This document shows, one piece after another, positions 8,862 through 10,705 of a stretch of 64,000 nt of DNA (the stretch's first letter is position 1; each line of letters begins with the position of its first letter). A model generated the notes under the pieces. That model did not search any database and had not been told where the DNA came from. It saw only the letters and a program-made list of their open reading frames with translations. The stretch is from assembly GCF_006345805.1 (NCBI RefSeq), contig NC_043003.1, positions 77,376,001-77,440,000 of the forward strand, written 5' to 3'. The position numbers were made by a program, and so were the translations under genes. The DNA comes from Octopus sinensis (Eukaryota).

Positions 8862-10705
8862 CTAGGGACAAAAGGGGGAAGAAACAAGAAAAGAATAATG
8901 AGTTGATGTATCAAAAACATACATATAACATGACGCAATTAACTTAATAAAGAAGCTTTTTTTTTTTTTAATTTAGAACTATAATATCTGAAATAGATTT
9001 ATCAGCATTACCATAGTACAGAAATATTGGTTACTTAAAATCTAAATAAAATTATAATTATTTCACTACACTAATTCTCACCTTTTATCTTTTTTTTTCT
9101 TTTTTAATTTACAGATTGGAAATTTTTTAATAATCAAGTAATAATAGTTTTTAAAAAAGATTTAGAGAGAGTTTCCTGTAAAAAGAAAGCTGAAATGGAA
9201 TTGGCGAGAAATGCTGAAAGAGAACAGTCTGAAACAGAGAGCTTGCCATCTGAAATAGGAGAGACCTGGCTATATTTTCTACCAAATCAGCAAGTTTCTA
9301 TGAGTCGCATTCCAATCACTTCAGGGAAAAAAATGTAAATAAAAAAAGAAAATAACATTTCTCTCTCTCTCCTTCCATGAGGAAAGCCTAATAGGGGTAA
9401 AAATCTTATGTAAAAAGATTTCATTTCAAGTAATGCTTGTTGAAATATTGAAACCTAATTTTTATTTGATCTTTCAATGATCAATAAGGCATCATTTCTT
9501 AAAAACATCAAATATTTTACCCCACAACTAAATAAATTCTACTTTTACTTCAACTACAGCTGGTAGTGGAGATCAAAGTACTAACAGAATAACCACAGTC
9601 TAGACAGTTGCTAGACACAGAGATATATCCCACAAATACAAGTAGGATTATGTTCTCCAAATTCTGCAGCATTAACACTACCTAAAAGCATTCCGCTTTC
9701 AGTTAAAAACTAGAAACTGTTTCCCAAGGCATAAACTTACATAGAAACTGTATCTCTAAAGAGTATGCCAGTTTGCTGAAGTGCATGACAATGTAGTGTT
9801 GGGGAAAGCTACAGCACTAACTGTCACAGTACCTACACAGCTAGATCAGAGTTCAATGGAATGAGCAAAAGTATTTTTTTTAGCACGAAACTGAGCCACA
9901 GTTAATACCCACTCCATGATAAGCAAGATCTAGCTGTAATATGTGTGATTAATCTTTATAGATAGAAGACTAGTACAAAAGTAACTATACATAATATTTT
10001 CCTCAGCAATGGAATAAGCCTTCTTTTGAAGCTTTATTTACTACTCAGATTATCAATATTATTTCATGTTTTACCTAACACTTTCATTAAAAAGAAAAGG
10101 AAAAAAACTCATTAAGAGAATCCTAAAATCCTGCCTTAAAACAAGACAATGAACAAGAAATACCATTTGATTATCAAAAATGAAATGAAGATGAGCTAAA
10201 CAACAATTTCAATAGACACGAGATTACATCTGCCAAGACCTATTGGTCTATGTATGCAAACACACACATTCATACACCCCCATAAATACATACATATGTA
10301 TATTTATACATATATATTATATATATATATATGTGCACTCACACCAAAGTTCTGTTCGCTAAAAGAGAATGTATTTTGCTCAGAAACAAACAAACTATTC
10401 AATACAGTTTTTAGCCTAATGAAACAAGAAAAATAACTGACACAATATGAATATGTGTAATTCGAGAAGCAGTTGCTCATTAGGTTACCCACATAAGTCC
10501 TGCTTGAAAAGAGCTAAACAGAGGACAGGGGGAATCAAAACAATCATTTACTGAAGAGACTCCCAAATGTTTTTCTCTTTCACACACTTTCTTCTAACCA
10601 AAGCAAACAAAACACTTCCAACTGTCCCACAGACTTAAGATGTGCAATTCATTCATTAATCCATTTTAAATGAGATTAAAACCTTCATTATAATCATAAG
10701 TTTTA

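What the first reader, a model, noticed from the sequence alone, without database searches (positions are those of the whole stretch)
9176..9255. Tandem array of five acceptor-like motifs within 80 bp on the U2AF2 sense strand
Minus strand reads tctcctatttCAG atggcaagctctctgtttCAG actgttctctttCAG catttctcgccaattccatttCAG ctttctttttaCAG. That is four TTTCAG (9250, 9229, 9214, 9190) plus TTACAG (9176), each with a short pyrimidine run, and not a simple tandem repeat. Three more TTTCAG lie at about 8569, 8598 and 8988. A rough hand estimate gives well under one expected per 80 bp. This resembles the repeated UUUCAG sites of uaf-1 exon 3 and could act as a U2AF sponge, nuclear-retention element or recursive splicing point.
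Basis: partly seen in the sequence, partly recalled or inferred. Interest (0 to 1): 0.78.

Follow-up and report, generated by a model that had tools for sequence, protein, structure and literature searches.

The report
Pseudo-acceptor array beside U2AF2 poison exon
In an octopod's gene for the splicing factor that recognises intron ends (U2AF2), five imitation intron ends sit about 350 bases before a conserved 'poison' exon, at a place kept in molluscs and an annelid, so the factor may use them to sense and limit its own level.

Summary
On the minus strand, 9255..9176 holds four TTTCAG and one TTACAG. That density was never reached in 400 simulated 64-kb sequences.

The array lies in the 3158-nt intron after the U2AF2 exon ending ...NEDQ, and 314-388 nt upstream of a 97-nt poison exon (8861..8765). 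That exon has a long pyrimidine tract, a GC donor and an in-frame TGA. A gastropod transcript contains the orthologous exon spliced in.

In the seven loci examined (two octopods, a bivalve genome and a bivalve-like RNA contig, a gastropod, a chiton, an annelid), the densest TTNCAG cluster of the whole locus is the one 200-620 nt upstream of this exon. The motifs also show acceptor features that were not searched for: a pyrimidine run at -11..-7 and almost no T at +1.

Best reading: an array of weak 3'-splice-site mimics that belongs to the U2AF2 autoregulatory module, probably bound by U2AF. Binding and effect are untested.

Recursive splicing is not supported, because AG|GT is not conserved. 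A macaque has only an 81-nt intron at this position. The closest precedent is C. elegans uaf-1 exon 3. I rate it a new variant of a known kind.

The parts
9176..9255 (-). Array of five acceptor-like motifs. TTTCAG at 9255-9250, 9234-9229, 9219-9214 and 9195-9190; TTACAG at 9181-9176. AG-to-AG spacing is 21, 15, 24 and 14 nt.
   Evidence: Sequence. Statistics. It is 87% identical to Argonauta, against 64% at third codon positions. Orthologous arrays are found in six other loci. Predicted to be unstructured.
8765..8861 (-). Poison cassette exon of 97 nt (length = 1 mod 3). In the frame of the upstream exon it reads NEDQ|L R G R G stop.
   Evidence: Conserved start YWTAGGGGAAGAGGTTGA and conserved end before GCAAGT in molluscs and an annelid. 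The orthologous exon is spliced between the NEDQ and VKELL exons in the gastropod transcript L003. 99% identical to Argonauta.
8862..8925 (-). Pyrimidine tract and TAG acceptor of the poison exon (AG at 8863-8862).
   Evidence: 94% pyrimidine at -20..-4. 100% identical to Argonauta. Conserved in all seven loci.
8759..8764 (-). GC-type donor of the poison exon (CAG|GCAAGT).
   Evidence: GCAAGT follows the exon in the window, Argonauta, Elysia, Pecten, Liolophura and Owenia.
12020..12099 (-). Constitutive U2AF2 exon (start of RRM2, ...[11 protein letters not shown]). Its weak donor CAG|GTATTT opens the intron that holds the array.
   Evidence: tblastn. Boundaries. Donor scores of 0.9-5.8 bits in all species on a rough matrix.
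8862..12019 (-). The 3158-nt intron between the NEDQ exon and the poison exon. It contains the array.
   Evidence: Only the last roughly 500 nt (from 9371) aligns well with Argonauta (83%); one further stretch (11598-11296) aligns weakly at about 71%.
8280..9371 (-). Conserved island of 1.1 kb, covering the array, the poison exon and about 480 nt downstream.
   Evidence: One of only two stretches of the intronic sequence that blastn aligns co-linearly between the window and Argonauta (83% over 1133 columns); the other is 11598-11296 at about 71%. Sub-block identities are 87-100%.
9076..9081 (-). Strong GT donor-like site (AAG|GTGAGA), 94-168 nt downstream of the five acceptors. Found in octopods only.
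   Evidence: It lies in a block that is fully conserved with Argonauta. No comparable donor in the other five loci.
8569..8603 (-). Two further TTTCAG downstream of the poison exon (8603-8598, followed by GT; and 8574-8569).
   Evidence: Conserved in Argonauta. Not seen at this place in other classes.
8988..8993 (-). Single TTTCAG, 126 nt upstream of the poison-exon acceptor.
   Evidence: Conserved in Argonauta only (-122).

Best explanation
The 80-nt stretch is an array of weak 3'-splice-site mimics in the U2AF2 pre-mRNA. Each mimic is a U-rich run of about 8 nt, then CAG, then a base other than U. The array is one part of a conserved autoregulatory module. The other parts are a weak donor on the upstream constitutive exon and a poison exon with a very strong pyrimidine tract but a GC donor.

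Proposed mechanism (inferred). The sites are low-affinity binding sites for the U2AF65/U2AF35 heterodimer, spaced about one footprint apart (13-25 nt). When U2AF is in excess it fills them. The occupied pseudo-acceptors then engage the weak upstream donor without productive splicing, or change how the nearby poison-exon acceptor is used. The transcript is thereby diverted from productive NEDQ-to-VKELL splicing towards poison-exon inclusion and/or a detained, nuclear, intron-retaining RNA. Less U2AF65 is made, which is negative feedback.

Shown here: the array, its statistical excess, its conservation in position and number across Mollusca and an annelid, its acceptor-like features, the poison exon and its use in a relative, and an intron-retaining RNA that carries the array in a relative.

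Inferred: U2AF binding, the direction of the effect, and nuclear retention.
For: - The excess is far beyond chance.
- In all seven loci, the densest TTNCAG window of 130 nt on the sense strand is the one upstream of the poison exon. First AG positions are -388 (window), -404 (Argonauta), -421 (L001), -348 (Pecten), -402 (Elysia), -324 (Liolophura) and about -620 (Owenia, 8 copies). For the five independent genomic lineages, the chance that the top window falls within 700 nt of the exon is roughly 1e-8 (my arithmetic from the locus lengths).
- Sequences between the motifs are not alignable across classes, but motif number and density are kept.
- Features not used in the search also fit an acceptor. 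Pyrimidines make up 77% of positions -11..-7, against 54% at other TTNCAG. T at +1 occurs in 1 of 33 motifs, against 36% elsewhere (Fisher p = 3e-5). Position -4 varies (T, A or G), as in the acceptor consensus.
- Between the two octopods the array is 87% identical while third codon positions are 64%.
- The RNA is predicted to be single-stranded (z = +1.3), which fits a protein-binding platform.
- RNA contig L001 has the upstream introns removed but retains this intron through the array into the poison exon.
- L003 shows the poison exon spliced in.
- Literature: nematode U2AF binds UUUUCAGR (PMC2762039). Human U2AF2 is reported to promote inclusion of its own poison exon (PMC8091538; PMC6547761). 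Decoy acceptors and decoy exons bind U2AF and promote intron retention (PMC6097662). Detained introns flank NMD-switch exons (PMC4281565).
Against: - There are no binding, CLIP or splicing data for this species.
- Under a generic rule (YAG preceded by at least 8 of 11 pyrimidines) the array is not uniquely dense in Elysia and Owenia, and only ties in the window. The signal is therefore a short U-run plus CAG, not full-length pyrimidine tracts. That means weak U2AF65 sites at best, and it leaves room for another factor.
- The TTNCAG definition was widened after seeing Pecten. With strict TTTCAG, the top-window result holds in 6 of 7 loci.
- A primate lacks the whole arrangement at this intron (81 nt), so it is not universal.
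- The direction of any effect is unknown (more poison exon, more retention, or a buffer).
Confidence: 0.55

Rival explanations
1. The motifs are genuine alternative acceptors of a second, multi-acceptor PTC-bearing cassette exon. The first AG would be used and the others would lie inside the exon, as in uaf-1 exon 3. In octopods that exon would end at the donor AAG|GTGAGA (GT at 9081-9080), giving exons of 94-168 nt.
For: A strong donor that is 100% conserved between the two octopods lies 94-168 nt downstream. Read from the first acceptor in phase 0, the sequence hits a TAA (own translation). Multiple competing splice sites are a noted feature of decoy exons (PMC6097662).
Against: No comparably strong donor lies between the array and the poison exon in the other five loci (rough matrix). 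The one spliced transcript available (L003) joins NEDQ directly to the poison exon. No protein tail matches such an exon, but octopod truncated forms were absent from that list altogether.
Confidence: 0.15
2. The array is a platform for another RNA-binding protein that regulates the poison exon, for example a PTB-type or other pyrimidine-tract binder, or an unknown UUUCAG reader. Its likeness to acceptors would then be incidental or secondary.
For: UCUU and CUCUC elements are frequent in the array. The signal is hexamer-specific rather than a property of long pyrimidine tracts. The caspase-2 decoy acceptor works together with PTB sites (cited in PMC6097662).
Against: CAG is invariant while position -4 varies. 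T is avoided at +1 (1 of 33 against 36%). The pyrimidine run extends about 8 nt. That is the acceptor consensus, not a PTB motif. The host gene encodes the acceptor-recognition factor itself.
Confidence: 0.15
3. The motifs are recursive splice sites that remove the long intron in steps.
For: The sites are acceptor-like and lie in a 3.2-kb intron.
Against: None of the five is followed by GT; the following bases are AT, AC, CA, CT and GA. AG|GT occurs only sporadically in other species and is not conserved. In the other species this intron is under 1.1 kb (Pecten, Elysia, Liolophura, L001) or about 2.1 kb (Owenia).
Confidence: 0.03
4. The cluster is a chance or compositional cluster, a repeat fragment, a DNA-level element or a structured RNA.
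For: The region is AT- and pyrimidine-rich.
Against: 0 of 400 simulations, and 5e-5 or less under a local model. No tandem repeat and no other copy. No Rfam match. No excess structure. Conserved at the same place across two phyla and on the sense strand only.
Confidence: 0.02

Closest known systems
C. elegans uaf-1 (U2AF65) alternative exon 3 (Zorio et al. 1997, Mol Cell Biol 17:946; MacMorris et al. 1999, PNAS 96:3813). Recalled from memory; neither paper is held in the library.
   Same: Same gene family (U2AF large subunit) and same strand. Both are a dense run of matches to the 3'-splice-site consensus. As I recall, uaf-1 has 10 in 216 nt, about one per 21 nt; here it is one per 16-18 nt. 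Both are associated with a PTC-introducing alternative exon. Both suggest self-recognition by U2AF.
   Different: Here the array is intronic, 200-620 nt upstream of a separate short poison exon, and is removed when that exon is spliced in (L003). In the worm the repeats lie inside the included exon. Nuclear retention and U2AF dependence were shown in the worm and not here. Whether the worm exon sits in the same intron was not tested. PMC2762039 says only that the short isoform uaf-1b starts within RRM2, which is compatible.
Human U2AF2 poison cassette exon (PMC8091538; PMC6547761).
   Same: A conserved PTC cassette in the U2AF2 gene, proposed to give negative autoregulation by AS-NMD.
   Different: In a macaque the intron at the equivalent NDDQ|VKELL junction is only 81 nt and holds no cassette. 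No TTTCAG cluster exists anywhere in the 21-kb locus. The mammalian exon must therefore lie in another intron. No pseudo-acceptor array is described in the papers I could read.
Decoy 3' acceptors and decoy exons that promote exon skipping or intron retention (caspase-2 In100; SF3B1, OGT, ARGLU1; PMC6097662, PMC7373989).
   Same: Splice-site-like elements inside an intron that bind U2AF, engage terminal splice sites non-productively and accompany PTC cassettes in splicing-factor genes. Multiple competing sites are noted there as a feature.
   Different: Here there are five to eight acceptor mimics in a row, without paired donors in most species. No functional data exist.
Detained introns flanking NMD-switch exons (PMC4281565).
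   Same: A conserved intronic island around a poison exon in a splicing-factor gene. An RNA contig from a relative (L001) is fully spliced upstream but retains this intron.
   Different: Detention (a nuclear, polyadenylated, slowly spliced RNA) was not measured here.

Membership tests
uaf-1 exon 3-type self-recognition element | Lies in the pre-mRNA of the U2AF large subunit, on the sense strand. | tested here: met
uaf-1 exon 3-type self-recognition element | Many matches to the 3'-splice-site consensus packed into 100-200 nt. | tested here: met
   5 in 80 nt here and 4-8 in 80-133 nt in relatives. The consensus features are shown.
uaf-1 exon 3-type self-recognition element | The repeats lie inside an alternatively included exon. 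| tested here: inconclusive
   The gastropod transcript L003 removes the orthologous region as intron. Only octopods have a strong donor that could make the array exonic. No RNA data for this species.
uaf-1 exon 3-type self-recognition element | RNA carrying the repeats is retained in the nucleus in a U2AF-dependent way and escapes NMD. | not testable with these tools
   Needs cell fractionation, in situ hybridisation and U2AF knock-down.
uaf-1 exon 3-type self-recognition element | Same intron position as in nematodes (homology rather than analogy). | not tested
   No nematode locus could be fetched. The only hint is the description of uaf-1b in PMC2762039.
AS-NMD poison cassette exon (applies to 8861..8765, not to the array) | A cassette with its own acceptor and donor between two constitutive coding exons. 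| tested here: met
   The downstream VKELL exon lies beyond the window edge. In Argonauta it is 8.7 kb further on.
AS-NMD poison cassette exon (applies to 8861..8765, not to the array) | Inclusion brings an in-frame stop and/or a frameshift. | tested here: met
   LRGRG-TGA and a length of 97 nt here. Lengths of 59-94 nt in relatives, none a multiple of 3.
AS-NMD poison cassette exon (applies to 8861..8765, not to the array) | Observed spliced into RNA. | tested here: met
   Seen in a gastropod relative only (L003). Protein tails LRERG*, LRYRG* and others point the same way. Not seen for this species.
AS-NMD poison cassette exon (applies to 8861..8765, not to the array) | The isoform is degraded by NMD and responds to the level of the host protein. 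| not testable with these tools
   Needs NMD inhibition and U2AF perturbation.
Decoy 3' splice sites / decoy exon | Splice-site-like motifs inside an intron that tends to be retained. | tested here: met
   Acceptor-like features. Retention seen in L001, a relative.
Decoy 3' splice sites / decoy exon | Bound by U2AF, and mutation of the sites relieves retention or changes exon choice. | not testable with these tools
   Needs CLIP or EMSA and minigenes.
Recursive splice site | An acceptor directly followed by a donor (AG|GT), conserved. | tested here: not met
Tandem or interspersed repeat | Head-to-tail units, or further copies elsewhere. | tested here: not met

The most novel reading that the evidence does not exclude
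The array together with the GC-donor poison exon is an ancient U2AF-concentration sensor. In this reading a row of low-affinity 3'-splice-site mimics lets U2AF read its own abundance on its own pre-mRNA. The module would have been inherited at least from the lophotrochozoan ancestor. The long-isolated C. elegans uaf-1 exon 3 would be the nematode derivative of the same module, not a worm oddity.
Probability: 0.3. Interest if true: 0.8.

Novelty: new variant of a known kind. Interest (0 to 1): 0.62.

Why it matters
U2AF defines 3' splice sites for most introns, so its dosage has to be tightly controlled. A poison exon in U2AF2 is known in humans, and a repeat-bearing exon is known in C. elegans. 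How the factor reads its own level is not settled.

A row of acceptor mimics kept at a fixed place next to the poison exon, through the divergence of molluscan classes and an annelid, gives a concrete cis-element that can be mutated to test that question. If it proves homologous to uaf-1 exon 3, it would also give that exon, which I know only from C. elegans, counterparts in other phyla. It is also a clean natural example for the decoy-splice-site and detained-intron models.

Tried and rejected
- Recursive splicing: rejected, because there is no AG|GT and it is not conserved.
- Repeat or transposon: rejected.
- Structured RNA or known RNA family: no Rfam hit and no excess structure.
- A weak protein-level likeness of 8717-8646 to the RRM2 exon (E about 60): the spacing does not fit, so I treat it as chance.
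- Scan of metagenome contigs with the 16-mer TAGGGGAAGAGSTTGA, to find more transcripts: 120 chance hits, none encoding U2AF2. The pattern was too short for that collection.
- Look-ups of Lingula, termite and fish loci: not on record. The array could therefore not be checked in brachiopods, arthropods or fishes.
- Macaque locus: the equivalent intron is 81 nt, and there is no sequence similarity to the mollusc poison exon.
- The uaf-1 papers (PMC231820, PMC22377) are not held. Literature searches found no description of such an array outside nematodes.
- A generic 'long pyrimidine tract plus YAG' rule does not single out the array in every species. This is reported as a limit on the claim.

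Full report
**1. The observation.**
It has TTTCAG ending at 9250, 9229, 9214 and 9190, and TTACAG ending at 9176. Each is preceded by a short pyrimidine run, with 59-82% pyrimidine at -20..-4. The three other TTTCAG (ending at 8988, 8598 and 8569) are also present.

TTTCAG occurs 55 times on this strand of the window and 43 times on the other. Four within 80 nt, or five TTNCAG within 80 nt, is the window-wide maximum on either strand. Neither count was reached in 400 first-order-Markov simulations of 64 kb. With a model trained only on the local pyrimidine-rich 401 nt, the probabilities were 0/20000 and 1/20000. It is not a tandem repeat, and it has no second copy in the window.

**2. Where it sits.**
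U2AF65-type exons lie on the minus strand. Over 193 residues the protein is 99.5% identical to Argonauta hians U2AF2, so the window comes from an octopod cephalopod. The exon at 12099..12020 ends ...[11 protein letters not shown], with the donor CAG|GTATTT. The next coding exon (VKELL..., the rest of RRM2) is not in the window. In Argonauta it lies 8.7 kb beyond the element described next.

**3.
An RNA contig from a relative (L001) is spliced through the upstream exons and then runs on into this intron. It carries its own run of TTTCAG, and then a block about 80% identical to window 8925..8844. That block is a long pyrimidine tract, a TAG acceptor, and then CTTAGGGGAAGAGGTTGA. In the frame of the NEDQ exon this reads L R G R G stop.

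A gastropod-like metatranscriptome contig (L003) contains the orthologous 76-nt segment spliced exactly between the NEDQ exon and the VKELL exon. This breaks the reading frame.

In the window the exon is 8861..8765 (97 nt), followed by CAG|GCAAGT, a GC-type donor. The same start, the same kind of end and the same GC donor are present in:
- Argonauta hians
- Elysia marginata
- Pecten maximus
- the chiton Liolophura sinensis
- the annelid Owenia fusiformis.

None of the exon lengths is a multiple of three.

Truncated database proteins end NEDQ+LRERG*, LRYRG* (termite), RG* (psyllid), RRLRAW* (spider), TRSAMMCRAFG* (rotifers) and TQPRGFG* (a fish). This suggests a cassette at this junction well beyond molluscs. 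I could not fetch those loci.

A poison cassette in human U2AF2 is already known (PMC8091538; PMC6547761). In a macaque, however, the intron at this junction is only 81 nt. The mammalian exon must therefore lie elsewhere.

**4. The array is conserved with the exon.**
The table gives positions measured from the G of the poison-exon acceptor.

| Locus | AG positions of the acceptor-like motifs |
|---|---|
| Window | -388, -367, -352, -328, -314 |
| Argonauta | -404, -385, -368, -344, -331 |
| L001 | -421, -407, -357, -342, -327 |
| Pecten | -348, -333, -301, -288, -273 |
| Elysia | -403, -378, -352, -302 |
| Liolophura | -324, -310, -251, -232, -211, -202 |
| Owenia | eight between -618 and -491 |

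In Pecten the motifs are TTACAG, TTGCAG and TTTCAG.

In every one of the seven loci (1.7-64 kb), the densest 130-nt window of TTNCAG on the sense strand is this one. With strict TTTCAG the same holds in six of seven. The antisense strands show nothing comparable. For the five independent genomic lineages, the chance that the top window falls within 700 nt of the exon is about 1e-8 (my arithmetic from the locus lengths).

Between the window and Argonauta, the only well-aligned part of the intron is a 1.1-kb island, 9371..8280 (83% identity); a second stretch, 11598-11296, aligns only weakly at about 71%. Identities are:
- 64% at third codon positions
- 87% in the array
- 100% in the pyrimidine tract and acceptor
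- 99% in the poison exon
- 96-98% for 225 nt downstream.

Across classes the sequence between the motifs cannot be aligned, yet motif number and spacing (mostly 13-25 nt) are kept. That is the signature of a cluster of binding sites.

**5. Are they really acceptor-like?**
I pooled 33 motifs, counting the octopods once. Positions that were not used in the search still look like an acceptor:
- Pyrimidines make up 67-82% of positions -11..-7, a mean of 0.77. At other TTNCAG in the same loci the mean is 0.54.
- Position -4 varies between T, A and G.
- T at +1 occurs once in 33, against 36% elsewhere (Fisher p = 3e-5).

There is a caveat. With a generic rule (YAG preceded by at least 8 of 11 pyrimidines), the array is not uniquely dense in Elysia or Owenia, and it only ties in the window. 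These are therefore short, probably weak sites (U-run plus CAG), close to the nematode-type UUUUCAGR consensus (PMC2762039). They are not full-length pyrimidine tracts.

The 116-nt RNA around the array is predicted to be unstructured (z = +1.3). No Rfam family matches.

**6. Mechanism.**
This is the most likely reading, at confidence 0.55. The array is a row of low-affinity U2AF65/35 sites that forms part of the autoregulatory module of U2AF2. When U2AF is abundant the sites fill. The transcript is then diverted from productive splicing towards inclusion of the poison exon and/or a retained, nuclear intron.

Several things fit this:
- the weak donor of the NEDQ exon in all species
- the GC donor of the poison exon
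- the intron-retaining contig L001
- the literature on decoy acceptors and decoy exons that bind U2AF (PMC6097662)
- the literature on detained introns next to NMD-switch exons (PMC4281565).

Binding, the direction of the effect and localisation are all inferred, not shown.

Rivals:
- The sites are real alternative acceptors of a second cassette. Octopods have a conserved AAG|GTGAGA donor at 9081. The other lineages lack one, and L003 splices straight to the poison exon (confidence 0.15).
- The array is a platform for another pyrimidine-binding regulator (0.15).
- Recursive splicing: there is no AG|GT (0.03).
- Chance, repeat, DNA element or structured RNA (0.02).

**7. Comparison and novelty.**
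The closest precedent is C. elegans uaf-1 exon 3. As I recall, it has ten consensus acceptors within a 216-nt PTC exon and is retained in the nucleus in a U2AF-dependent way (from memory; the papers were not available). The present case shares the gene, the motif and the logic. It differs in that the array is intronic and sits beside a separate short poison exon.

Whether the worm exon occupies the same intron was not tested. The statement that the short isoform uaf-1b begins within RRM2 (PMC2762039) is compatible with that.

I found no description of such an array outside nematodes. I therefore file it as a new variant of a known kind. The poison exon itself is a new member of a known kind.

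Noticed in passing
window 8881-8875 and 8857-8851 (minus strand): CUUCCCC in the pyrimidine tract can pair with GGGGAAG at the start of the poison exon, enclosing the TAG acceptor in a 17-nt loop. The hairpin appears in the centroid fold, and both arms are conserved in most loci. Elysia changes both sides to a mismatch, so there is no covariation support.
   Followed up: partly
window 8764-8759 (minus strand), and orthologues in L004-L008: The poison exon uses a GC donor (CAG|GCAAGT) in every lophotrochozoan locus examined. 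Apart from the U-to-C change at +2, it is a perfect match to U1.
   Followed up: partly
window 8764-8540 (minus strand): The 225 nt downstream of the poison exon are 96-98% identical to Argonauta, far above third-codon identity (64%). The stretch includes TTTCAG|GT at 8603-8597 and TTTCAG at 8574-8569. Function unknown.
   Followed up: partly
protein tails (P0006, P0021, P0024, P0030, P0033, P0040, P0045, P0048, P0083): Truncated U2AF2 products from a termite, a beetle, a psyllid, a spider, rotifers and fishes leave the NEDQ/NDDQ junction into short tails, many of which end in RG or FG followed by a stop. This suggests a cassette at this junction in many bilaterians.
   Followed up: partly
L129 14367-14447 (Macaca fascicularis U2AF2): The intron at the equivalent junction is only 81 nt. 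It is read through in frame in the annotated isoform X1 (P0245). An AAG|GCAAGT site at about 7617, in another intron, might mark the mammalian cassette. This was not examined.
   Followed up: no
L004 25690-25735 (Elysia): A second acceptor-plus-TTAGGGGA-like segment (cccctctag|TTAGGGGACCAAGG...gtaagt) lies about 590 nt upstream of the real poison exon. It could be a degenerate duplicate or a second mini-cassette.
   Followed up: no
window 15192-15244 (+ strand): Three TTTCAG within 53 nt on the strand antisense to U2AF2. This is the runner-up cluster of the window, and I take it to be chance.
   Followed up: no
window 1900-4700, 10250-10340, 61300-62000, 63770-63900: Long AT-rich microsatellite-like blocks of imperfect TA/TG/CA repeats (TRF reports period 2 at 10282-10332) give spurious 'YIYVCV' reading frames in every frame.
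   Followed up: no
window 11234-11286 and 11598-11296: A 25-nt unit is duplicated in tandem. It lies inside a stretch that is about 71% similar to the Argonauta intron. This could be an old mobile element or a second weakly conserved intronic block.
   Followed up: no
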